Below the pieces are notes generated by a model. That model had not been told where the DNA came from. It made no database searches and saw only the letters and a list, made by a program, of their open reading frames with translations. A DNA stretch of 63,341 nucleotides, the filler included, from Ministeria vibrans ATCC 50519 (taxonomy: Eukaryota > Protista > Filasterea): the NCBI GenBank assembly GCA_943704425.1. It is 9 parts of 9 records of this genome, joined end to end, with 100 filler letters (N's around TTAATTAATTAA, not from the genome) between each part and the next. Parts side by side here need not be neighbours in the genome. Positions count along the whole stretch, not along the records: positions 14,747 to 23,930 come from CALSCP010002217.1; 8 more parts are not named here. One strand, given 5' to 3'. The stretch's first letter is position 1. The number at the start of each line of letters is the position of its first letter. Positions 13,957-23,930 of the stretch are shown piece after piece. Made by a program: the position numbers and the translations under genes.

Positions 13957-14762
13957 GATGAATACCAGTTACGGGGTAAGCGCCAAAGAATTAAGCAATA
14001 AAATTAATATTTAATATAATAAAAATTTAGAAGAAGTCAAGAAGAACTCTGAACTCTGAAGAAGACGACATTTCCAATTTATATTATCAATCATGACAAC
14101 ACAAACAGCTCAGAACCACTTTCTAAGGTAAATAAATTTAAGCTTAAAGCTACGGAAGCGTCGAGAGGGAGAGATTTAAAATAGTCTTTAAAGTGTAAGT
14201 GTAGCAATCATACAATGAAGAGTAATACAATGCTTCCGCCATATATAGGTTAGCCCCAGAAAGATGGAGCATTTATACTCCAATCATAGAGTATTAAGTG
14301 ATAAACCTAAAGGCTAAATAAGACTATAGACGAACTATAGACTCACAAATGTAAAATACGAAGAAGCCCCAAGGGAATTCGGAGAGAGGCACGCACACGC
14401 GAGAGCACGTACGTGCGAGACAGCAATGCCCGCAGCAGCATGTTGCCTCTAAGGCGCTTTCATGTACGGCGGCGACCAGTGATCGGGGACACTAGTCACC
14501 ACGGTTCACGGCGGCAGGATGGCGAGGACCCCAGGGGGGGAAGGAACCAGCCTGTACATGTGCCTTTCCATGTGGGTGTCGCGGGAGTGTCGCGGATTCG
14601 TGGTCAGTAATTTCGGTGGTGCACAAATGGAACACGGGTGGGGGGGNNNNNNNNNNNNNNNNNNNNNNNNNNNNNNNNNNNNNNNNNNNNTTAATTAATT
14701 AANNNNNNNNNNNNNNNNNNNNNNNNNNNNNNNNNNNNNNNNNNNNCAGGATAAAAAGAAAT

Positions 14763-15104
<342 letters not shown>

Positions 15105-15122
15105 TTAAATCAACTGATCCAT

Positions 15123-15313
15123 TTTGAATTGGCGATCGCTGTCAAAGGAGATTTGTGCAAATCGAGAGGGGTTGGTGTCAAAAAGGCACGGTGGTGTCAA
15201 ACGGGCAAAGTACCTCAAAAAGGCACGTTGGCCTCAAAAAGGCACGTCTCTCATTGGCCAAGACCCTTACATAGGGGCGACCCCTCGGAGTGTGTCGCCA
15301 AAAAGTATATAAG
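15123..15313. promoter_or_regulatory. Bidirectional H4/H2B promoter with repeated motifs
   Basis: TCAAAAAGGCACG x3 (15178-15190, 15215-15227, 15234-15246), TTTGAATTGG at 15123-15132, ATTGG (reverse CCAAT) near 15253, TATATAA near 15306. Confidence 0.7.
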
Positions 15314-15372
15314 CGAGAATTTAACGTTTTTTTCATCACTTTTGTTTCACATTTACAAAACCAAATCACATC

Positions 15373-15832
15373 ATGCCCCCGAAAGCAGGAAAGAAGGCCG
15401 AGAAGAAGGCTGGCAAGAAGGCCGCCAAGAAGGGAGGAGACAAGAAGGGCGGACGGTAAGACAACTTCAAACATACTTTGTATTTGGCGCGCAAATTTCT
15501 CAACGGTTATTTCTCTCTCTTCTTTTGTTGTATATAGCCGCAAGCGCCGTAAGGAATCGTACGGCATCTACATCTACAAGGTGTTGAAGCAGGTGCACCC
15601 CGACACTGGTGTCTCCACCAAGGCCATGAGCATCATGAACTCGTTTGTCAACGACATCTTCGAGCGCATTGCCGCCGAGGCCTCCAAGCTCGCCTACGTC
15701 AACAAGAAGTCGACCATCTCGAGCCGCGAAATCCAGACCGCCGTCCGCCTGCTCCTCCCCGGTGAGCTCGCCAAGCACGCCGTCTCCGAGGGCACCAAGG
15801 CCGTCACCAAGTACACGTCGACCTCCAAGTAA
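15373..15832 (+). CDS. H2B: Histone H2B (intron 15456-15537)
   Basis: [12 protein letters not shown]...|[24 protein letters not shown]...[16 protein letters not shown]. Confidence 0.98.
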
Positions 15833-15872
15833 ATCGTGCGTCTACAACAACAACCCCCAACAAACCAACCCT

Positions 15873-15888
15873 GGTGTTTTTAAACACC
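15873..15888 (+). promoter_or_regulatory. Histone mRNA 3' stem-loop
   Basis: GGTGTT-TTTA-AACACC (6-bp stem, 4-nt loop) 40 nt after the H2B stop, with AC-rich flanks. Confidence 0.85.
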
Positions 15889-16406
15889 ACAACCCCTTAC
15901 ATTTCTCCAGTGGAGATGCGATTCATATTTTCATTTTGTGGACATGATTTACTTTTTCTTTGTTGTGTGGCACAAACTAAATAATTATTATTATGATTAT
16001 TTTAATTGTGCTGAGACTTCTTCTCTCAAGGATTGTTAAACACACATCAATGGTGTTTTAAAACACTGCCATCTCTTACATTTCCCCAGAGGAGACTCAA
16101 CTAGCCAAGTTGTTATTTTTTGTAAGTTGAAGTTCCAAGTTTGTTCACAACTAATTTTTCTTGCTCATGAAGGAACTTCGCTTCTTAACTACACTATACA
16201 TCGTCGATTCTTTTTTGACGGTGTCGTCCCTGCCTTTGGACTTACATTTTGAGAAGTATAGACGTTGACTGCGTTGTTGAAGAATGAAGCACGAATGAAG
16301 ACTCTAATGTATTTTCTTAATCATAAAAATAATGACAACTGAAATCTTTTAATGTTTAATTATAATTCATCTTTTTTAATTTTTTTTCATCATTATTATT
16401 GTCTTT

Positions 16407-18268
16407 ATGCATCCTTGCCGGTTACGTTGCCTGTCAAGGACCTTCTCCACGGCAGTAAAGCAGGTGGTGCCCGCCGGTTGGCACGCTGACATTGGTTTGG
16501 AAGTTCACGCTCAAATTCACACTGATCGCAAACTTTTCTCGGGTACGTTCCGCCTCTCATTGTCAGACATTCACGTATAATTTCTCCCTCCTCTCTTTTG
16601 GTACGTATAGATGCCCCTGTGCGCTTTGGCGAGCCAGTCAATTCGTGTGCAACCTTTCTCGATCGTGGTCTGCCCGGGACACTTCCTGTTGTCAATCGTG
16701 CCTGTGTTCAGGCTGCCGTGCGCACCGCCGTGCTCCTCAATGCCCGTGTCAACCTCAAGAGTGACTGGGATCGTAAACACTACGTGTACCGCGACCTGCC
16801 GCTCGGTAGGAGACACAAATCCATTGAATATCATCACAACACCAATGATTGTTTCAAACTCCTTCTCTTGTAGGGTATCAGATCACGCAGCAACGACGAC
16901 CCATTGCCTCGGAAGGACACTTGGATGTGGGCGAGCACAAGCGTCGCGTGGACATTGAACGTATCCAGCTGGAACAGGACAGTGGCAAGTCGGTGTGGGG
17001 CGAAGGGGAGGGGGAGACGATCGAACGGCGTGTCGTCGACTTGAATCGTGCGGGCGTGGGTCTCATGGAAATCATCACGCGTCCCTGTCTGCATGACGGC
17101 GCCGATGCCGAAGCATTTGTGCGTACCCTGCGCGACGCCCTCGTGCGTCTCGGTGTCAATGATGGCAAAATGGCTGAAGGCTCAATGCGTGTTGACGCCA
17201 ATGTGAGTGTGCGTCGAGTCGATTCCGCCGAGCTGGGCACGCGTGCCGAAGTGAAGAATGTCACGGGTCTGCGTTACCTTCGACGCGCCATTGACTATGA
17301 GATCCGTCGACAGGTACAGCTCCTTGAGTCGGGTGGTGTGGTGGAGCGTGAGACTCGCGGCTTTGACGCACGCGGCGGAGGGCGCACGGTGGACATGCGC
17401 CACAAAGAGGCAGCAGCGGACTATCGCTTCATGCCCGAACCCGACTTGCCTACGTTGGAGGTGTCCGCCAACGAAGTAGACGCTCTTCGCCGCGAGACAC
17501 ACGAACACCTGGCGCGCACAGAAGAACATGGTGACGGCGGCGCGAATGGGCCCTGCGCAGCCCTCACGTCACAGCTGCACAACGAACATGCCATTCCTCA
17601 CGAAGTGGCACACACCCTTGCAACCTCCCCGGGCGCCTTTGACTTCTTCACGGCCACCCTCCCACACACAGCAATGCCGCCATCGCGCGTTGCCCACTGG
17701 GTCGCTGTCGAGCTGCGCGGGCGCCTCCAGCAGCACCGTCGCGCCCTTGTCGAACGGCCCTGTGTCGTTCAGCCGGCCGCCTTTGCCTCCCTCCTCCAAC
17801 TTGTCCACGACAACGTACTTTACTTCATTAACTCCGCTTAGGCTATAGTCAAATTTATTATTGTTTTTTTACACCCTGTTTTAGCGGGTTCCTCCTGTGG
17901 GCGCTAAAGAGGTCCTCAAGCGAATGGTGAGCGACAGCACTGGCTTAGGCGCACAAGAACCCATCGAGCTTGCCACGATGCTCAAAGTGCGACTCGACCA
18001 CCACCACCAAGCCACAACGACGCAGGGCAACACTGACGTCAGCAGCAGCGACGACGACGACGACATCACAGAGCAACTGGTCGAGCGTGTGCTAAGGGCA
18101 CACGAAGGGGCACTGCGACGTGCCAAGACGCACTCCAAGCGCACACACAAGGCCGTTGGGATGGTTCTGATGGAGCTGCGTGCACAAGGTTTGCCAATGT
18201 TGCCGCCCCAGCACATTGCGTCGGTGGTGGCTGCTCTGTTACCAAAGGTCATTCCCAACGACGATTGA
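16407..18268 (+). CDS. GATB: Mitochondrial glutamyl-tRNA(Gln) amidotransferase subunit B (4 exons)
   Basis: Transit-like N-terminus, IGLEVHAQ, KLFS, LPGTLPVVN, DRKHYVYRDLP, GYQITQ, IQLEQDSGK, DLNRAGVGLMEII, MRVDANVS, EVKN, YRFMPEPDLP. Confidence 0.95.
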
Positions 18269-18510
18269 AGAGACGAGCGTGTGTAGACTTGTAATGTGTA
18301 ATAAATTTATTATTATGAATTATTATTACGACGATTGAAGAGACGAGCGTCTGCAGACTTGCAATGAGTAATAAATTTATTATTATGAATTACTATTGCG
18401 ACGATTGAAGAGACGAGCGTGTGCAGGCTTGCAAGGTGTAATAAATTTATTACTATGAATTATTATTGCGACGATTGAAGAGACGAGCGTGTGTCGACTT
18501 GTAATGTGTA
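18258..18510 (+). repeat. 70-bp tandem repeat, about 3.6 copies
   Basis: ACGATTGAAGAGACGAGCGT recurs at 18261, 18331, 18401 and 18471. Confidence 0.95.
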
Positions 18511-18566
18511 GTAAAAACTATTTTTTAGTATGTTTGTGACAGTGTGTGACATGTCTCTCGCGATTT

Positions 18567-19605
18567 CTACTCGGATCGAGCGGCATTGATTTGCTTGAGG
18601 GCCAAGTAAAGTGCCTGTGTGCCCTTGAGGCCGTTTCCCTGCGCCTTGACGCTGACATACAGCTGATGGGCGAGGGCAAGACCCGGCAGAGCGAGGTTGA
18701 GCGCACGACACTCGTCAAGGGCAATTTCAAGGTCCTTGACAAAGTGTTGGACAAAAAAGCCTGGCTCGTAGTCACCCTTGAGAATGCGTGGCGCATACGC
18801 CGTCAGACTGAAGCTGCCCGCGGCTCCACCGCCCACCGCTCGAATGGTCGCCTCAGGATCCAGACCTACACTCTGGGCGTAGAGGAGTCCCTCGCAAACA
18901 CCAACCATGGCACTGGCAATCAAAATCTGGTTCGTCATCTTCGTCTGCTGCCCAAGTCCATGACTGCCCATGTAGTTGGATGTTTTCGACATGGCCGCGA
19001 AGAGCGGAGCGACCTCTTTGAACGCCAGCTCGTCACCCCCACACATGATTGTGAGCGTTGCATTGCGCGCTCCAATATCGCCTAAAAACAAACATGACAC
19101 CATTCGCTCAGACTCTGTCGAGGCATGCGTGCGTTGCGTATGTCGATACCGCCCGAGACTGGTGCATCAAGGGCAAAAATTGCCTTTGCGTTTGCTGCAT
19201 CGCCAATCTTTTTCGCGAGTGATGGACGCGACGTGGTCATGTCCACTGCAATACTGCCCGGCTGCATGTACGGCAGAGCACCCGTCTCGCTGTCGAGCCA
19301 CACCGACTCAACCTGCGCCCAGACTAGCGTGTTAGGGAGTGCTGTGAATTTTGTTTCACACAGTTGTTTACGTCGGAGGGAAAGCCCACAATCGAAAAGA
19401 CGACGTCGCACTGCTCGGCGACGGCTCTCGGTGACTTGACCAACTGTGCTCCCATAGCAACAACATCAGCGGCCTTGGATGGCGTTCGTGTGTACACAAA
19501 CGGAGCGGTGAAGCCTGCTCTAATGAGATGCTGCAACATCGAACTCCCCATCACCCCCGTTCCAATCCATCCAATCTTGGTGATTCCCGCCTTGACAGAG
19601 TGCAT
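18567..19605 (-). CDS. 3-hydroxyisobutyrate dehydrogenase / tartronate semialdehyde reductase family (3 exons)
   Basis: IGWIGTGVMG, VDMTTS, LDAPVSGG|DIGA, GLGQQTKMTNQI, PGFFVQHFVKDL. Confidence 0.92.
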
Positions 19606-19822
19606 ATTCAGATCAAAACAAACAAATGGGAAACAAAAGATAAAATCGCGAAATAGAAAAATAAATAGATTCACGAATCACGAGTGACTGCGTGTCATCG
19701 GTCATTTTATTCGGTCTGCGGTCATTTTTTTTAATCAAGGAATCACCCACATTCTTCACGCACCTGTTTACTACCCACACACACCCCATACTCCTCAGCT
19801 CTTACACTCCTCTCCTTTTGCA

Positions 19823-22800
19823 ATGTCGTCGCAGAACAAAAACTTTCCTGGACACAATTACGCCCTTTTCATTGGACGAAGCCTTTACGACAATGAACTT
19901 GCGCTTGACCCGCTGTCAGGCGTCGCCTCCACTGCACGCAACACGGCCGTCGACCTTGTCCGCAATGGCTTCAATGTGCTTGTCCTCACTGATACGCCCA
20001 TGGCACTGTCTCAGCCTGGTTTTAACCAACCAACTCTCGAAGAAAAATACATTGCTGACGCTGACCACGCCACGAAACAGACCAAAACCCTACACTGGAC
20101 GGTCAAAGAAAAGCCCGCGAGAAAGCACATCCTCGCCGCTCTAGAGAAGCTTGAAACTCTTGTGCCTGGCCATCACCCGAGCTCTCAGGACCAGCTCATC
20201 GTCTATATTTGTTCGCACGGCCTCCTCAACGCCAAGGACAACTCGTACGGCGCAGCACTCGGAGACACTCTATGCACAGCATCTCGCCCAACTCTCCCCA
20301 CCAGCTACGATGGCGCTTACACAATGGCGCAGCTGAAGAAGGATTTGGGCGTTGACAGCACGAAACCCTGGCGTAACGTCCTCGTCGTCCTCGACACCTG
20401 TTTCTCGGGAGACGCCTTTGATGCGACCAAGGTGTCGCTGCGTGCTAGGGGGAACATTGAAACGGACCAAATGCAATGGTTCTATCAGAGCGAGTCGTAC
20501 CAGTGTTTGGCGGGAGCGCCTTGCGGGCGCAATGCTTTTTGTTTGCCTCAAGGCACAACGCTGCATACAGCGCTGCGACGAGCCTGGCTCTCTCCTGGTG
20601 GCGATGGTGGGGCATTCGCGCGTGAGAAAGAAGGTGCTGCTCAGTGGGCGACGGTCAGGTGCTTGGCAGACCGCGTCAATGAGGAACTGGCGGCTGAGAT
20701 GAAGCGACTGACGTCAACCCTGCTTAAGAGACCCGACGTCTGCGAGCCCCGTCAGACTTGTCTGCTGGGACGACTTCCTTGGCGCTGCAGTCACAACACA
20801 GGCGAGTTTATCGTATTTAACAAGAACTACAAAGAGCGCAACAAGCTCGAGATGATACCCGTACTGCCCACCTGCTTCACAGGCCGCACGGCTCAACTGG
20901 CGGAGCTACACTCGCGACTGATGAGTGATAGACATCCGGCGATCGGCAACAACATTGCTGTAAGTGCAGCGGGTGGTATGGGCAAGAGTGCCATGGCGGC
21001 AATGTACTCGACGCAATATGTGAATGACTACACGTGGCTGTTGTGGGTGCGCGGCTCGAACGCCGGAACGATCGTGGCGTCGTTTCGTGCGGCGGCCGCG
21101 TATATTCCTCTGTCAGAGGTGACGAGCGCAACTAAAGACGAGGAGGTGGTTGTGATGATACGACGGTGGCTAGGACACGAGAACGGCTGGCTGATGGTGG
21201 TGGATGGGTGGGATACCGTGACTAAGGAGATGGTGGCGATGCTGCCCATGGGACAGACGGCCGGGGATATTATTATAACCACCCGTCTGCATAGTCTTTG
21301 CGATTTTGGAGGACTCTTTGGCGGTGGGGTCGGGGGAGGAAGTGGTACACCTTTGTTTCTGGATGTACTAGAGGATGATGAGGCGTTGGATTACTTGCTT
21401 GAGAGACTGCCCACCCGGAGAGAGGAGAGTGAGGGGCTGCGAAAGGTGGTGGTGAGCCTGGGAAAAATGCCTCTTGCTCTTGAGCTTGCAAGTGCCTACC
21501 TTTCTAAATTTGAAACCGTTAGTGTGAGTGCGTATCTAAAGAAACTGCGTGTAGACCGATTGAATGCACTGCAGAACCTACGAACAGGCGACGGAGAGGT
21601 GGTGAATCAAGTGCTGGCGACGTATGTGCCAAGCATCGTGCGAGCACTGGAGACTGAATCACAAGACATGGTGAAGAAGATTGTAAGTGTGATTGGGTTT
21701 GTCGACGGTAGTGGAGTTGAAGCCGATCTGCTGCGCCTATTGGTGGTGAGGCGAAGACACGGAGAGGAAGAGGGGGCGGGAGAGGATGATTTTGATATGG
21801 CACTCTCGGTGTTGCGTGGACTCTCAGTTTTGAAGGTGAAGGGGAAGAGTGTAAGCGTACATGAGCTGGTGCAGGATGTGTGTCGGACCATGGCATTTGC
21901 TTCTGAGGAGGATAGATGGAAGGTATTGTTGGGCATAGGGACGGCGTTGAAGGAAGAAATTGAAGACGTGGAGAAGATCTACTCTGCGATGGAGTGGAGT
22001 CGAAAAATTGGAGTGCATGGTATGAAGTGTTTGGAACGGATGGTGGAGAGAAAAAGCCAGGACGATGTGGCTGTGTGGCTTGGAGTGCGGCTGGCGCAGT
22101 TGTGGCAACTCAATGGTCAGTTTGGTGAGGCGATGCGTGGGATTGAAATGGGTATTCAGTGTCTTGGAAAGGATTCAACAGTTGCGGTCAGGGCGTTGGC
22201 TACAAAAGCCGGCGTGTTTCACGATCAGGGCGCGTACGGACTTGCTCTTGAACTTCTACTTGGTTTGGAGGCTCATCCTCTCCAATCAGAAAAGGGGGCG
22301 ATTTTGAACGGCATAGCAGCTGCGTACAAGGCACAAGGAGACTACCCAAATGCTCTTAGTTATTACAAGCGTGCTCTAGATGCCATACAGGAAGCTCTTG
22401 GATCAGACCACCCATCCGCTGCCGACACGTTGAATAACATGGGTATTGTGTTCCGGGCACAAGGAGACTACACTAGTGCTCTCGAACACTATAACAGTGC
22501 TCTGTCAATCAAAGAGAAGTCTCTTGGTGCATTCCACCCATCAACAGGCGACTCTCTCAATAACATCGCATGTGTGTTTCGTGCTACTGGTAAATATGAA
22601 CGCTCCCTGAAATTCAATAAGAGAGCACATGGAATCAACCTTGAAACTGTTGGTGAATTGCACCCATCTACCGGCAAGACTCTCAACAATATTGCTCTTG
22701 TATACTACTCACAAAAAAAATACTCTTTTGCCCTCGATAACTATATGCATGCTCTGACCATTCGAGAGAATTCCCTTGGTTCTGTCCACCCATTAACAGG

Positions 22801-23524
22801 CCAGACACTATACAATATCGCCAATGTCATGCAGGCACGCGGCGAGTACAGGGATGCTCTTGAATATTATGAGCGCGCACTCTCTATCCGTCAACGCTCA
22901 CTTGGTCGGAATCACCAGTTTGTCGGCCAGGTCTGGAACAACATGGCTACTTTATTCCGTACTCAGGGGATCTATACCCGCGCTCTTGAATGCTATGAAC
23001 GTGCTTTGAGTATTCGCACGATATCTTTTTCTGCGGACCACCCAGACATTATCCGCACACGCACCAACATTGCGCTTGTGTATGTATATCTCAATCAAAG
23101 GGATCACAATGACGCTCTAGCGGAGTACTGTAGCTACGCAATAAGTATTTTTAAGAATCTTCCATGTGATCCGTATGCAGGAGACACACTGATTCTCATG
23201 GCCATTGTGCTTTATTCGTGTGAGGAATACGACTGCGCTCTGGAGTGTAATTTGCAGGCTCTCACCATCTGTAAGAAATTCCTTGAGCCCCACCACTCAT
23301 TCGCGGGCCACATTTTAGTCAATATGGCAATCTTGCATGAGGCAAAAAAAAATTATACTCAGGCCCTTGAGTGTTTTACGCGTGCCATAGCCATCTACCG
23401 GGAGATACTTTCTCTCAATTCAATCAACTACCAAACCACACTCACCAGTTTAAACAAAATGGTTGGAGTGGCCAGCAACCGAAATCTGCCCGTCGCGCTT
23501 TTGAGTACCATGAATGTGCTTTGA
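19823..23524 (+). CDS. NLR-like protein: caspase-like peptidase C14 + NB-ARC/STAND NTPase + TPR array (single exon, 1233 aa)
   Basis: ALFIG...YICSHG...VVLDTCFSG; Walker A AAGGMGKS; Walker B WLMVVDGWD; IIITTR; GKMPLALELASAYL; VHELVQ; about 9-10 42-aa repeats LGxxHPxxxxxLNNIA. Confidence 0.9.
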   Translation: MSSQNKNFPGHNYALFIGRSLYDNELALDPLSGVASTARNTAVDLVRNGFNVLVLTDTPMALSQPGFNQPTLEEKYIADADHATKQTKTLHWTVKEKPARKHILAALEKLETLVPGHHPSSQDQLIVYICSHGLLNAKDNSYGAALGDTLCTASRPTLPTSYDGAYTMAQLKKDLGVDSTKPWRNVLVVLDTCFSGDAFDATKVSLRARGNIETDQMQWFYQSESYQCLAGAPCGRNAFCLPQGTTLHTALRRAWLSPGGDGGAFAREKEGAAQWATVRCLADRVNEELAAEMKRLTSTLLKRPDVCEPRQTCLLGRLPWRCSHNTGEFIVFNKNYKERNKLEMIPVLPTCFTGRTAQLAELHSRLMSDRHPAIGNNIAVSAAGGMGKSAMAAMYSTQYVNDYTWLLWVRGSNAGTIVASFRAAAAYIPLSEVTSATKDEEVVVMIRRWLGHENGWLMVVDGWDTVTKEMVAMLPMGQTAGDIIITTRLHSLCDFGGLFGGGVGGGSGTPLFLDVLEDDEALDYLLERLPTRREESEGLRKVVVSLGKMPLALELASAYLSKFETVSVSAYLKKLRVDRLNALQNLRTGDGEVVNQVLATYVPSIVRALETESQDMVKKIVSVIGFVDGSGVEADLLRLLVVRRRHGEEEGAGEDDFDMALSVLRGLSVLKVKGKSVSVHELVQDVCRTMAFASEEDRWKVLLGIGTALKEEIEDVEKIYSAMEWSRKIGVHGMKCLERMVERKSQDDVAVWLGVRLAQLWQLNGQFGEAMRGIEMGIQCLGKDSTVAVRALATKAGVFHDQGAYGLALELLLGLEAHPLQSEKGAILNGIAAAYKAQGDYPNALSYYKRALDAIQEALGSDHPSAADTLNNMGIVFRAQGDYTSALEHYNSALSIKEKSLGAFHPSTGDSLNNIACVFRATGKYERSLKFNKRAHGINLETVGELHPSTGKTLNNIALVYYSQKKYSFALDNYMHALTIRENSLGSVHPLTGQTLYNIANVMQARGEYRDALEYYERALSIRQRSLGRNHQFVGQVWNNMATLFRTQGIYTRALECYERALSIRTISFSADHPDIIRTRTNIALVYVYLNQRDHNDALAEYCSYAISIFKNLPCDPYAGDTLILMAIVLYSCEEYDCALECNLQALTICKKFLEPHHSFAGHILVNMAILHEAKKNYTQALECFTRAIAIYREILSLNSINYQTTLTSLNKMVGVASNRNLPVALLSTMNVL

Positions 23525-23898
23525 AAGACAGATGGGCTGAGGGCGGACGCAAACAGAAGTCGCCAAGGTGGGACGTCTCATGTTTCTTTTTTATTTTAAT
23601 AATTACCCCGTATTTCGTATGGAACTCTTTCTTCTTGTACCAAATTTCTTCTTGAGTAAACTTTTTACATTTATTCATATTCCTTCGGGGGGGGGGTTAA
23701 TATTATTTAATTTTAGGGCTCTGACTATAAGGAGTCTGTCGGGCGGTGGAAGAGTATTGGCAGACGCGCGTATGGCAGAAAGTGTAATTAAAAAGTCGAA
23801 GTCGTTAACGTTGATCTGTTGTCGGCGGTGGCGTAGGCGACTCCCGCGGATCCCAGTAGTTATAGTGTGCTCGCACAGTACACACCAGCCCAAAGGGG

Positions 23899-23930
<32 letters not shown>

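What the first reader, a model, noticed from the sequence alone, without database searches (positions are those of the whole stretch)
19823..23524. Intronless caspase-NB-ARC-TPR gene: candidate single-chain innate-immune/cell-death sensor-effector in a unicellular eukaryote
Seen: one 3.7-kb ORF with no introns, while nearly all neighbours are spliced. It has a C14 peptidase with an intact His-Cys dyad (SHG, His codon 20216-20218; DTCFSG, Cys codon 20399-20401), a STAND NTPase (AAGGMGKS, LMVVDGWD, IITTR, GxxPLAL, VHELV as MHD-like motif) and about 9-10 42-aa TPRs. Established: effector-STAND-TPR is the architecture of fungal NLRs and bacterial Avs-type antiviral proteins, whereas animal apoptosomes/inflammasomes recruit caspases in trans. 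Inference: ligand binding by the TPRs oligomerises the NB-ARC and activates the fused protease, giving a self-contained defence system (for example against giant viruses or bacteria). It may have been gained by horizontal transfer or retroposition.
Basis: partly seen in the sequence, partly recalled or inferred. Interest (0 to 1): 0.88.

Follow-up and report, generated by a model that had tools for sequence, protein, structure and literature searches.

The report
Caspase-fold NB-ARC-TPR gene, marine alga
A marine microbial eukaryote expresses an intact, intron-free gene that joins a caspase-type protease, an NB-ARC molecular switch and a TPR sensor in one protein, a design already known from fungi and bacteria but, as far as I could find, not described in algae.

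Summary
Window 19823-23524 (+) is one 1233-aa ORF. His132 and Cys193 sit at the stated codons. NB-ARC and TPR_12 pass Pfam's cut-offs, and there are nine regular 42-aa TPR units.

Pfam Peptidase_C14 is below threshold (15 bits against 21.4). Other evidence supports the caspase call:
- An AlphaFold model (pTM 0.82) matches caspase-8, metacaspase-4, legumain and MALT1 at Z 16-17 over about 210 residues; unrelated folds score 8 or less.
- Cys193 is invariant and His132 at least 90% conserved, in register with two clear C14 proteins.

The gene is eukaryotic and expressed. RNA contigs from two organisms cover 19725-23677 without gaps and end in a non-templated poly(A) tail, while the neighbouring gene shows two GT..AG introns.

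The N-terminal domain has only 10 relatives among 1.84 billion representative proteins. Two other loci repeat the caspase-like to NB-ARC order. Five related environmental copies carry frameshifts or stop codons.

Function is inferred: ligand-driven oligomerisation activating the fused protease. Caspase-related CHAT peptidases fused to fungal NLRs, and bacterial metacaspase-STAND fusions, are already published, so this is a new member of a known kind. Recent horizontal transfer or retroposition is not supported.

The parts
19725..23677 (+). Polyadenylated, unspliced mRNA. It has a 98-nt 5' UTR without ATG and a 153-nt 3' UTR.
   Evidence: run X6 contig 16 covers 19725-23677 with 0 differences and 0 gaps, followed by 22 non-templated A. 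Run X10 contig 2 covers 19763-23650; there is no genomic A-run at 23677; there is no ATG in 19725-19822.
19823..23524 (+). Coding sequence, 1233 codons plus stop.
19823..20830 (+). Caspase-fold (clan CD, C14-like) domain, residues 1-336, covering both the p20-like and p10-like halves.
   Evidence: VIA Z 17.1 to caspase-8 (218 residues aligned, rmsd 3.9), 16.9 to metacaspase-4 and 16.3 to caspase-9 and legumain; the top 22 rows are all clan CD with Z above 12. Foldseek probability 1.00 to GSU0716, caspases and MALT1. NCBIfam caspase_w_EACC1 at 9e-7; 28 of 30 nearest ESM Atlas clusters are Peptidase_C14. Pfam C14 reaches only 15 bits.
20216..20218 (+). Codon of His132, the candidate catalytic histidine in the SHG motif, directly at the end of a beta-strand.
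   Evidence: at least 90% conserved; aligned with GHG of P0020, a 52-bit C14 protein; the strand runs through residues 124-131/136.
20399..20401 (+). Codon of Cys193, the candidate catalytic cysteine in the DTCFSG motif, at the end of the next core strand.
   Evidence: the only invariant column of alignment A2; aligned with DCCFAG of P0020; strand at 185-193.
20719..20720 (+). Site (codon 299) where the 99.6%-identical environmental allele carries a CT insertion that splits the ORF between the protease and the NB-ARC.
   Evidence: L001; the same insertion is in run X17.
20894..21529 (+). NB-ARC NTPase core, residues 358-569. Walker A GGMGKS is at 20966-20989, Walker B LMVVDGWD at 21191-21214, IITTR at 21272 and GKMPLAL near 21470.
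   Evidence: Pfam PF00931, 31-34 bits against a cut-off of 23.5. (motif positions).
21857..21871 (+). VHELV, an MHD-like histidine motif in the putative winged-helix domain.
   Evidence: the weak Pfam hits WHD_ROQ1 (E 0.024) and DUF7779 (E 0.051) both end at residue 689 and so include this motif. This part is suggestive only.
22046..23431 (+). TPR sensor array. Two degenerate units cover residues 742-825, and nine regular 42-aa TPR_10/TPR_12 units cover residues 826-1203 (22298-23431).
   Evidence: TPR_12 5e-72, TPR_10 2e-58, TPR_NPHP3 133.8 bits against a cut-off of 100. (42-residue register).

Best explanation
This is a genuine, expressed nuclear gene of a marine microbial eukaryote, probably an alga. 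It encodes an NLR-like STAND protein with three parts: an N-terminal caspase-fold cysteine protease (a very divergent C14-like subfamily with an intact His132/Cys193 dyad), a central NB-ARC NTPase switch, and a C-terminal array of about 9-11 TPRs.

Shown: the architecture, the fold, dyad conservation, transcription, polyadenylation, absence of introns and the eukaryotic genomic context.

Inferred from what is established for Apaf-1, plant, fungal and bacterial STAND proteins: the TPRs hold the protein inactive until they bind a ligand of microbial, viral or danger origin. Nucleotide exchange on the NB-ARC then drives oligomerisation. Oligomerisation brings the caspase-like domains together and activates them by proximity. 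The active protease cleaves cellular substrates, possibly including a pore-former or the protein itself, causing cell death or a defence signal.

The gene belongs to a small, lineage-restricted family whose other sampled copies are often disrupted. That is the turnover expected of costly immune or cell-death genes.
For: Architecture: Pfam NB-ARC and TPR_12 pass their cut-offs. The NB-ARC-TPR part matches the bacterial NB-ARC/TPR model NF040586 at 3.6e-81 over residues 350-968.

Protease: the model from alignment A2 (pLDDT 71.5, pTM 0.82) gives VIA Z 15-17 to caspase-8, -3, -9 and -4, metacaspases 4 and 9, legumain, PIGK, MALT1 and GSU0716 over about 200-230 residues spanning model residues 2-340. 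Non-clan-CD folds score Z 8 or less. Foldseek probability is 1.00. The first, poorer model gave the same families. Cys193 is invariant and His132 at least 90% conserved, in register with two proteins that pass Pfam C14 at 46 and 52 bits. NCBIfam gives a caspase model at 9e-7. ESM Atlas gives C14 for 28 of 30 nearest clusters.

Real gene: RNA contigs of runs X6 and X10 cover the whole ORF without gaps and with a poly(A) tail. The same runs skip two GT..AG introns in the adjacent minus-strand gene. A DNA contig from a second sample (X4) spans 19589-23893 and overlaps the neighbour's contig. The flanks carry histone H4, histone H2B, GatB-like and dehydrogenase-like genes.

Family: L002 and L006 repeat the caspase-like to NB-ARC(-TPR) order at 45-60% identity.
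Against: There are no functional data of any kind. Pfam Peptidase_C14 is below its gathering score for this protein, and substrate specificity cannot be read from the model. The homodimer prediction gave no answer. No PADLOC defence model matches beyond a generic TPR. No gasdermin-like or other obvious substrate gene lies in the 9-kb piece. Differences from the environmental allele are 10 nonsynonymous to 2 synonymous (pN/pS 1.5, not distinguishable from 1), and that allele is frameshifted, so constraint on the gene may be weak. One family member (P0017) has lost both His and Cys, showing the domain can persist without catalysis.
Confidence: 0.6

Rival explanations
1. The architecture is the same, but the role is not pathogen sensing. 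The protein would be a stress- or development-linked regulator of programmed cell death, or of proteolytic signalling, triggered by an endogenous cue such as nutrient limitation or oxidative stress.
For: An NB-ARC+TPR protein of the diatom T. pseudonana changes abundance under N and P limitation (PMC5599023). The transcript appears in RNA runs of two cultured organisms whose culture conditions are not on record. No defence-system model matches.
Against: Frequent disruption of family members and the small, lineage-restricted, fast-diverging family fit conflict genes better than a conserved housekeeping regulator.
Confidence: 0.2
2. The caspase-like domain is a non-catalytic scaffold, or the whole gene is drifting towards a pseudogene. 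It would be transcribed but under little or no selection.
For: pN/pS is 1.5 between alleles, with 10 of 12 coding differences nonsynonymous. The 99.6% allele has a 2-bp frameshift. L002, L006, L007 and L009 carry frameshifts or stops. P0017 has lost the dyad.
Against: The window allele keeps 1233 codons open, and RNA contigs from two organisms match it exactly. His132, Cys193, Walker A and Walker B are all intact. Cys193 is invariant across A2. Twelve differences are too few to show relaxed selection (p = 0.74).
Confidence: 0.15
3. The gene was recently acquired from bacteria by horizontal transfer, or it is a retrocopy of a spliced parent gene.
For: It has no introns in 3.7 kb next to a spliced gene. 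The nearest named models and feature neighbours are bacterial. The only non-eukaryote-like relative of the N-domain is a bacterial-type C14+nSTAND1 protein.
Against: Identity to bacterial proteins is only 23-28%. An exhaustive search of 1.84 billion representatives found no close bacterial homologue. GC and GC3 lie within the neighbours' range. There is no genomic poly(A) remnant at the 3' end. Relatives L002, L006, L007 and L009 show no intron-sized gaps either, so no spliced parent is in view. Ancient bacterial ancestry of such modules remains possible but was not tested here.
Confidence: 0.05
4. The ORF is a bacterial contaminant or an assembly misjoin.
For: The metagenome gene caller split the ORF in L001. 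The X4 assembly graph branches at 19618.
Against: The mRNA is poly(A)-tailed. A DNA contig from a second sample runs from 19589, inside the promoter shared with the spliced neighbour, to 23893. The stretch is held by runs from 9 studies.
Confidence: 0.01

Closest known systems
Fungal NLRs with an N-terminal caspase-related CHAT peptidase (reviewed in PMC10197012; Clave et al., bioRxiv 10.1101/2021.06.03.446900, also held as PMC8851545)
   Same: A clan-CD protease is fused N-terminally to a NOD (NB-ARC or NACHT) module and to TPR, ANK or WD40 repeats. The same idea applies: the 'caspase' is part of the receptor instead of being recruited in trans.
   Different: Here the protease is C14-like, and no CHAT (PF12770) hit was found. 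The host is a marine microbial eukaryote, not a fungus. No gasdermin gene is seen next to it in this piece, whereas many of the fungal genes are clustered with one.
Bacterial metacaspase/orthocaspase-STAND fusions: metacaspase-NACHT-WD40 and two Chloroflexus metacaspase-NB-ARC proteins (PMC3501461); P0020-type C14+nSTAND1
   Same: The order is C14 domain, then STAND NTPase, then repeats. The His and Cys motifs are in register. The nearest feature neighbours are bacterial C14 clusters.
   Different: Identity is only about 26-28%. This gene is nuclear, polyadenylated and flanked by eukaryotic genes. Its NTPase is NB-ARC with TPR_10/TPR_12 repeats, unlike the NACHT-WD40 and nSTAND1 bacterial forms.
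Apaf-1/caspase-9 apoptosome and NLR inflammasomes of animals
   Same: An NB-ARC or NACHT switch with a repeat sensor activates a caspase-fold protease by induced proximity. The model matches caspase-9 and caspase-8 at Z 16-17.
   Different: In animals the caspase is a separate protein recruited through CARD or PYD adaptors. Here it is covalently fused and no death-fold domain is detected. The sensor is TPR, not WD40 or LRR.
Bacterial FxSxx-COOH system NB-ARC/TPR protein (NCBIfam NF040586)
   Same: It is the best named match for residues 350-968: 273.8 bits, E 3.6e-81, model positions 6-615 of 830.
   Different: The score is below the model's cut-off of 300. The bacterial operon context is absent. 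The bacterial protein model does not cover a caspase domain.
NB-ARC-TPR proteins of brown algae and diatoms (reference 181 in PMC10197012; Thaps3_22882 in PMC5599023)
   Same: They have the NB-ARC plus TPR module and occur in algae.
   Different: In the texts I could read, no caspase-like N-terminus is mentioned for them. The brown-alga genes diversify by exon shuffling, whereas this gene has no introns.
Bacterial Avs (antiviral STAND) proteins
   Same: The logic is effector, then STAND, then TPR-like sensor.
   Different: No PADLOC Avs model matches. Membership is not supported.

Membership tests
Peptidase C14 (caspase/metacaspase/orthocaspase, clan CD) | Score at or above the Pfam PF00656 gathering threshold | tested here: not met
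   15.0 bits, E 0.02, against a cut-off of 21.4. Relatives do pass: P0014 at 24.2 bits, the second gene of L008 at 46, P0020 at 52.3.
Peptidase C14 (caspase/metacaspase/orthocaspase, clan CD) | Caspase-hemoglobinase fold covering both the p20-like and p10-like halves | tested here: met
   VIA Z 17.1 to caspase-8 (218 residues aligned, rmsd 3.9), 16.9 to metacaspase-4 and 16.3 to caspase-9. The top 22 rows are all clan CD with Z above 12, and unrelated folds score 8 or less. Foldseek probability is 1.00. The model is predicted (pTM 0.82), not solved.
Peptidase C14 (caspase/metacaspase/orthocaspase, clan CD) | Catalytic His then Cys, each at the C-terminal end of a core beta-strand and in register with known members | tested here: met
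   Cys193 is invariant and His132 at least 90% conserved in A2, which includes two bona fide C14 proteins. In the pairwise alignment, SHG aligns with GHG and DTCFSG with DCCFAG. Strands run through residues 124-131/136 and 185-192/193.
Peptidase C14 (caspase/metacaspase/orthocaspase, clan CD) | Cysteine-dependent endopeptidase activity and P1 specificity | not testable with these tools
   This needs a biochemical assay.
CHAT peptidases (PF12770), the protease of fungal NLRs | Pfam CHAT match | tested here: not met
   There is no CHAT hit for the window protein at E up to 10. SAVED-CHAT is a lower structural match, Z 12.6.
NB-ARC STAND NTPase | Pfam PF00931 above the gathering score | tested here: met
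   31.3 to 34.1 bits against 23.5, residues 358-569.
NB-ARC STAND NTPase | Walker A GxxxxGK[ST], Walker B hhhhD[DG], and the RNBS-B and GLPL-like motifs | tested here: met
   GGMGKS within residues 382-389, LMVVDGWD at 457-464, IITTR at 484, GKMPLAL near 550. L006 keeps the same motifs.
NB-ARC STAND NTPase | Winged-helix domain carrying an MHD-type histidine | tested here: inconclusive
   VHELV lies at residues 679-683, about 130 residues after the GLPL-like motif. Only weak Pfam hits cover it: WHD_ROQ1 at E 0.024 and DUF7779 at E 0.051. This region was not modelled.
TPR_10/TPR_12 repeat sensors | Tandem 42-residue TPR pairs that pass the Pfam cut-offs | tested here: met
   TPR_12 at 238.5 bits, TPR_10 at 193.3 bits, TPR_NPHP3 at 133.8 bits against a cut-off of 100. 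Nine units are in exact 42-residue register.
FxSxx-COOH system TPR protein (NF040586) | NCBIfam equivalog cut-off of 300 bits and the bacterial operon context | tested here: not met
   273.8 bits. The gene context is eukaryotic.
Bacterial Avs and other PADLOC defence families | Match to a PADLOC protein model | tested here: not met
   Only the generic model PDLC01169 'TPR' matched, at 6.9e-12. Nothing matched the N-terminal domain.
NLR-type immune or cell-death receptor (functional class) | Ligand-triggered, nucleotide-dependent oligomerisation that activates the N-terminal effector | not testable with these tools
   The homodimer prediction for the protease domain gave no answer. Biochemistry and genetics are needed.

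The most novel reading that the evidence does not exclude
The gene is a working single-chain 'apoptosome' of a marine alga that triggers cell death on infection, for example by an algal virus. Its family would be under strong conflict-driven turnover. All three sampled multi-domain environmental copies are broken precisely in the linker between protease and NB-ARC. That would reflect repeated selection to uncouple a dangerous protease from its sensor, and the gene may be present on only some haplotypes.
Probability: 0.15. Interest if true: 0.75.

Novelty: new member of a known kind. Interest (0 to 1): 0.5.

Why it matters
Programmed cell death in marine phytoplankton, especially during viral infection and bloom collapse, is widely reported, but its upstream triggers are largely unknown. 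A transcribed, intact gene that joins a sensor, a switch and a caspase-fold protease gives a concrete candidate for such a trigger, testable in cultured strains. It also extends protease-fused NLR-like proteins, documented in fungi and bacteria, to another eukaryotic lineage. The protease subfamily is so divergent that Pfam misses it, so domain-based surveys of protist cell-death genes probably undercount such proteins.

Tried and rejected
(1) Sequence searches of solved structures with the N-domain found nothing significant. As a single sequence it matched only adenine phosphoribosyltransferase at E 0.45. As a profile of A1 its best hit was caspase-2 at E 0.14. P0020 found nothing.

(2) The search for homologous proteins on residues 1-345 with full-length candidates gave no hits.

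(3) Homodimer prediction of residues 1-340 returned 'no answer' with score 0.00. It is not evidence either way.

(4) The lineage could not be identified. A search with the GatB-like ORF gave only about 45%-identical bacterial and fish proteins. Run names are coded. Cluster look-ups gave no names.

(5) A JGI metagenome scan with the N-domain confirmed no relative. A viral-contig scan with A2 could not run because no stretch was conserved enough, so a link to giant viruses was not tested.

(6) I considered a variant genetic code as the explanation for in-frame stops in relatives and rejected it. The stops are TAG, TGA and TGA, at positions aligned to Tyr75, Arg252 and Pro321.

(7) The alternative continuation after 19618 seen in run X4 does not occur elsewhere in the piece. 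A simple deletion allele within this piece is therefore not shown.

I then aligned only the open pieces.

(10) The spliced neighbouring gene was never joined. Only single ORFs were searched, by reference.


Full report
OBSERVATION. The piece 14747-23930 contains one long ORF, 19823-23524 on the + strand, 1233 codons. The NTPase motifs are at the stated residues: AAGGMGKS 382, LMVVDGWD 457, IITTR 484, PLAL 550, VHELV 679. Pfam gives NB-ARC at 31.3 bits on the whole protein and 34.1 bits on the excised part, against a cut-off of 23.5, for residues 358-569. TPR_12 scores 5e-72, TPR_10 2e-58, and TPR_NPHP3 133.8 bits against a cut-off of 100. Written in rows of 42 residues, nine units from 826 to 1203 are in perfect register. 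Two degenerate units precede them at 742-825. At the DNA level the units are not a tandem repeat.

IS THE N-TERMINUS A CASPASE? Pfam alone does not say so. Peptidase_C14 scores 15 bits (E 0.02), below the cut-off of 21.4. Plain sequence searches of solved structures give nothing significant. Four other lines of evidence agree that it is.

(i) NCBIfam's 'caspase, EACC1-associated type' model matches residues 120-203, the stretch holding both proposed catalytic residues, at 9.3e-7. This is far below that model's own membership cut-off.

(ii) An exhaustive HMMER search of 1.84 billion representative proteins found only ten relatives. One of them, P0014, passes Pfam C14. The most distant, P0020, is a clear bacterial-type C14 (52 bits) fused to an nSTAND1 NTPase. 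A further gene next to relative P0015 in locus L008 is a 46-bit C14. In an alignment that includes both clear C14 proteins, Cys193 is the only invariant column. His132, Leu187, Asp191 and Gln227 are at least 90% conserved. The pairwise alignment puts VYICSHGL opposite FYFAGHGI, and VLDTCFSG opposite ILDCCFAG.

(iii) The ESM Atlas feature search returns Peptidase_C14 clusters for 28 of 30 hits.

(iv) Fold. The first AlphaFold model (pLDDT 57) already ranked metacaspase Yca1, caspases, legumain, PIGK and MALT1 on top. With the better alignment A2 the model reached pLDDT 71.5 and pTM 0.82. It then matched caspase-8 at Z 17.1 (218 residues, rmsd 3.9), Arabidopsis metacaspase-4 at 16.9, PIGK at 16.7, caspase-3 at 16.6, legumain and caspase-9 at 16.3, MALT1 at 16.0 and GSU0716 at 15.9. 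These alignments span model residues 2-340. The first 22 rows are all clan CD with Z above 12, and the first unrelated folds appear at Z 8 or below. Foldseek agrees, with probability 1.00. His132 and Cys193 each sit at the end of a core strand, as expected for this fold.

I therefore accept a complete caspase-fold domain (residues 1 to about 336) with an intact dyad. It belongs to a very divergent, un-annotated C14-like subfamily. Activity and specificity are untested.

IS THE GENE REAL, EUKARYOTIC AND EXPRESSED? The flanks carry histone H4, an H2B-like ORF, a GatB-like ORF and a 3-hydroxyisobutyrate-dehydrogenase-like gene. The stretch is held by runs from nine studies, including algae and seawater metagenomes; organism names are coded.

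Four runs were laid on 18300-23930. Runs X6 and X10 proved to be RNA. Their contigs skip 19081-19148 and 19311-19369, both CT..AC, which is GT..AG on the minus strand, in the dehydrogenase-like gene. X6 shows a poly(T) end for that minus-strand transcript. In the same runs one contig covers 19725-23677 (X6) and another 19763-23650 (X10), with no differences and no gaps. The X6 contig continues into 22 A that are not in the genome. The 98-nt leader has no ATG.

The gene is therefore transcribed, polyadenylated and unspliced, and 19823 is the first AUG. A DNA contig from a second sample (X4) runs from 19589 to 23893 and overlaps the neighbour's contig by 30 bases, so there is no contaminant misjoin. 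The two genes are head to head, with about 120 nt between the ends of their transcript contigs.

THE FAMILY. All close relatives come from metagenome or raw-run assemblies.

- L001 is a 99.56%-identical allele of window 20285-23914.
- L002 has a different GC content (0.574) and a cyclophilin gene as its neighbour. It repeats the full order caspase-like, NB-ARC, TPR, at 47% and 60% identity.
- L006 repeats caspase-like then NB-ARC, at 59% and 45% identity.
- Others have different tails. P0017 has a P-loop region but has lost both His and Cys. P0014 has a low-complexity tail. L008 holds two caspase-like genes in tandem.

Many copies are broken:

- L001 has a CT insertion after 20719 (codon 299). 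The same insertion is seen in run X17.
- L002 changes frame near residue 232-240.
- L006 changes frame near residue 317 and has a TGA at the position of Pro321.
- L007 has a TAG at the position of Tyr75.
- L009, from an independent dataset, has a TGA at the position of Arg252.

The stops differ in type and in the residue they replace, so a variant genetic code does not explain them. The three copies that span both domains are all broken between them. A rough post-hoc estimate puts that coincidence near 0.002 (note 4). I leave it unexplained. Low-coverage assembly errors are possible, but the CT insertion also appears in run X17, which may share its reads with L001.

Window and L001 differ by 10 nonsynonymous and 2 synonymous changes. 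That gives pN/pS 1.5, not different from 1 (p = 0.74).

MECHANISM. Shown: domain order, fold, motif integrity and expression. Inferred from the established behaviour of STAND proteins (Apaf-1, plant and fungal NLRs, bacterial Avs): the TPR array senses a ligand, the NB-ARC exchanges nucleotide and oligomerises, and the clustered caspase-like domains become active and cleave substrates, leading to death or signalling. I give this about 0.6. The main rivals are an endogenous, stress-linked role (0.2) and a non-catalytic or decaying gene (0.15). The homodimer job returned no answer and counts neither way.

COMPARISON WITH WHAT IS KNOWN. The idea of a caspase-type protease built into an NLR is published. 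A 2023 review of fungal immunity describes CHAT peptidases as one of two main peptidase clades at the N-termini of fungal NLRs. [quoted passage not shown] A 2012 survey of prokaryotic caspase homologues lists metacaspase-NACHT-WD40 as widespread and reports two Chloroflexus metacaspase-NB-ARC proteins (PMC3501461). NB-ARC-TPR proteins are reported in brown algae (reference 181 in PMC10197012) and in a diatom (PMC5599023). The 2014 catalogue of fungal NLR N-terminal domains does not list C14 (PMC4986451).

My searches found no description of a caspase-like NB-ARC-TPR protein in an alga or other protist. The library is incomplete, so this is absence of evidence only.

Membership tests gave these results. 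C14 is met by fold and dyad but not by the Pfam score. CHAT is not met. NB-ARC and TPR are met. FxSxx_TPR is not met (273.8 against 300 bits). PADLOC and Avs are not met.

TRANSFER OR RETROPOSITION. Bacterial proteins are the nearest named relatives of both modules, but at only 23-28% identity. No close bacterial homologue exists among 1.84 billion representatives. GC (0.515) and GC3 (0.55) fall within the range of the neighbours. There is no genomic poly(A) remnant. The diverged relatives also lack intron-sized gaps. Recent transfer or retroposition is therefore unsupported. Ancient bacterial ancestry was not tested.

LIMITS. The paralogue count, expression level and population frequencies could not be measured. 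Contig depths are not copy numbers. 

VERDICT. It is a new member, in a new lineage and with a highly divergent protease domain, of the known class of protease-fused STAND/NLR-like proteins. Its function remains inferred.

Noticed in passing
window 19589-19618 and onward (run X4): The DNA assembly of a second sample branches at 19618. One contig continues as the window through the whole gene. Another 171-nt contig shares 19589-19618 and then diverges (GGTCGATTTAAG...). Reported contig depth is about 207 upstream and about 116-119 on each branch. This could mean the gene segment is on one haplotype only, or that the upstream region is duplicated. Contig depth is a weak measure. The divergent sequence is not elsewhere in the piece.
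   Followed up: partly
window 22445-22472: A 28-base word coding IVFRAQGDYT in TPR unit 2 forms its own 31-nt contig in run X4, at depth 1850 against 116 for the gene. This may be a word shared by many TPR paralogues, or by unrelated DNA in the culture.
   Followed up: no
L001:436-437, L002 about 1765, L006 about 714-725 (window residues about 232-321): All three environmental copies that span protease and NB-ARC are disrupted in the linker between them. The cultured-strain gene and its mRNA are intact. A rough post-hoc chance estimate is about 0.002.
   Followed up: partly
window 19027: Runs X4 (DNA), X6 and X10 (RNA) all read T where the window has A, inside an exon of the dehydrogenase-like gene. 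This is probably a strain difference or a base error in the window's assembly.
   Followed up: no
window 18475-19606 (- strand): A 3-hydroxyisobutyrate-dehydrogenase-like gene with two RNA-confirmed introns, 19081-19148 (68 nt) and 19311-19369 (59 nt), and a poly(A) site near 18475. It lies head to head with the caspase-NB-ARC-TPR gene, with about 120 nt between the ends of the two transcript contigs.
   Followed up: partly
window 14763-15832: A divergent histone pair: H4 (14763-15074, - strand, one uninterrupted ORF) and an H2B-like ORF ending at 15832 (+ strand).
   Followed up: no
window 16849-17841: A GatB-like (Glu-tRNA(Gln) amidotransferase subunit B) ORF. Its best matches are only about 45% identical, to bacteria and fish mitochondrial GatB, so this search gave no close named relative.
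   Followed up: partly
L008:588-3189: Two caspase-like genes lie in tandem on one metagenome contig: P0015 (31% identical to the window domain) followed by a 339-aa clear Peptidase_C14 at 46 bits.
   Followed up: partly
window 23902-23930: An (AT)14.5 microsatellite lies at the right end of the piece. X4 contigs are cut there.
   Followed up: no
window 18300-18509 (run X4): In X4's contig, a 41-nt copy of 18469-18509 directly precedes 18300, reported as a joint that 'goes back 210'. This is a small structural difference or repeat downstream of the dehydrogenase-like gene.
   Followed up: no
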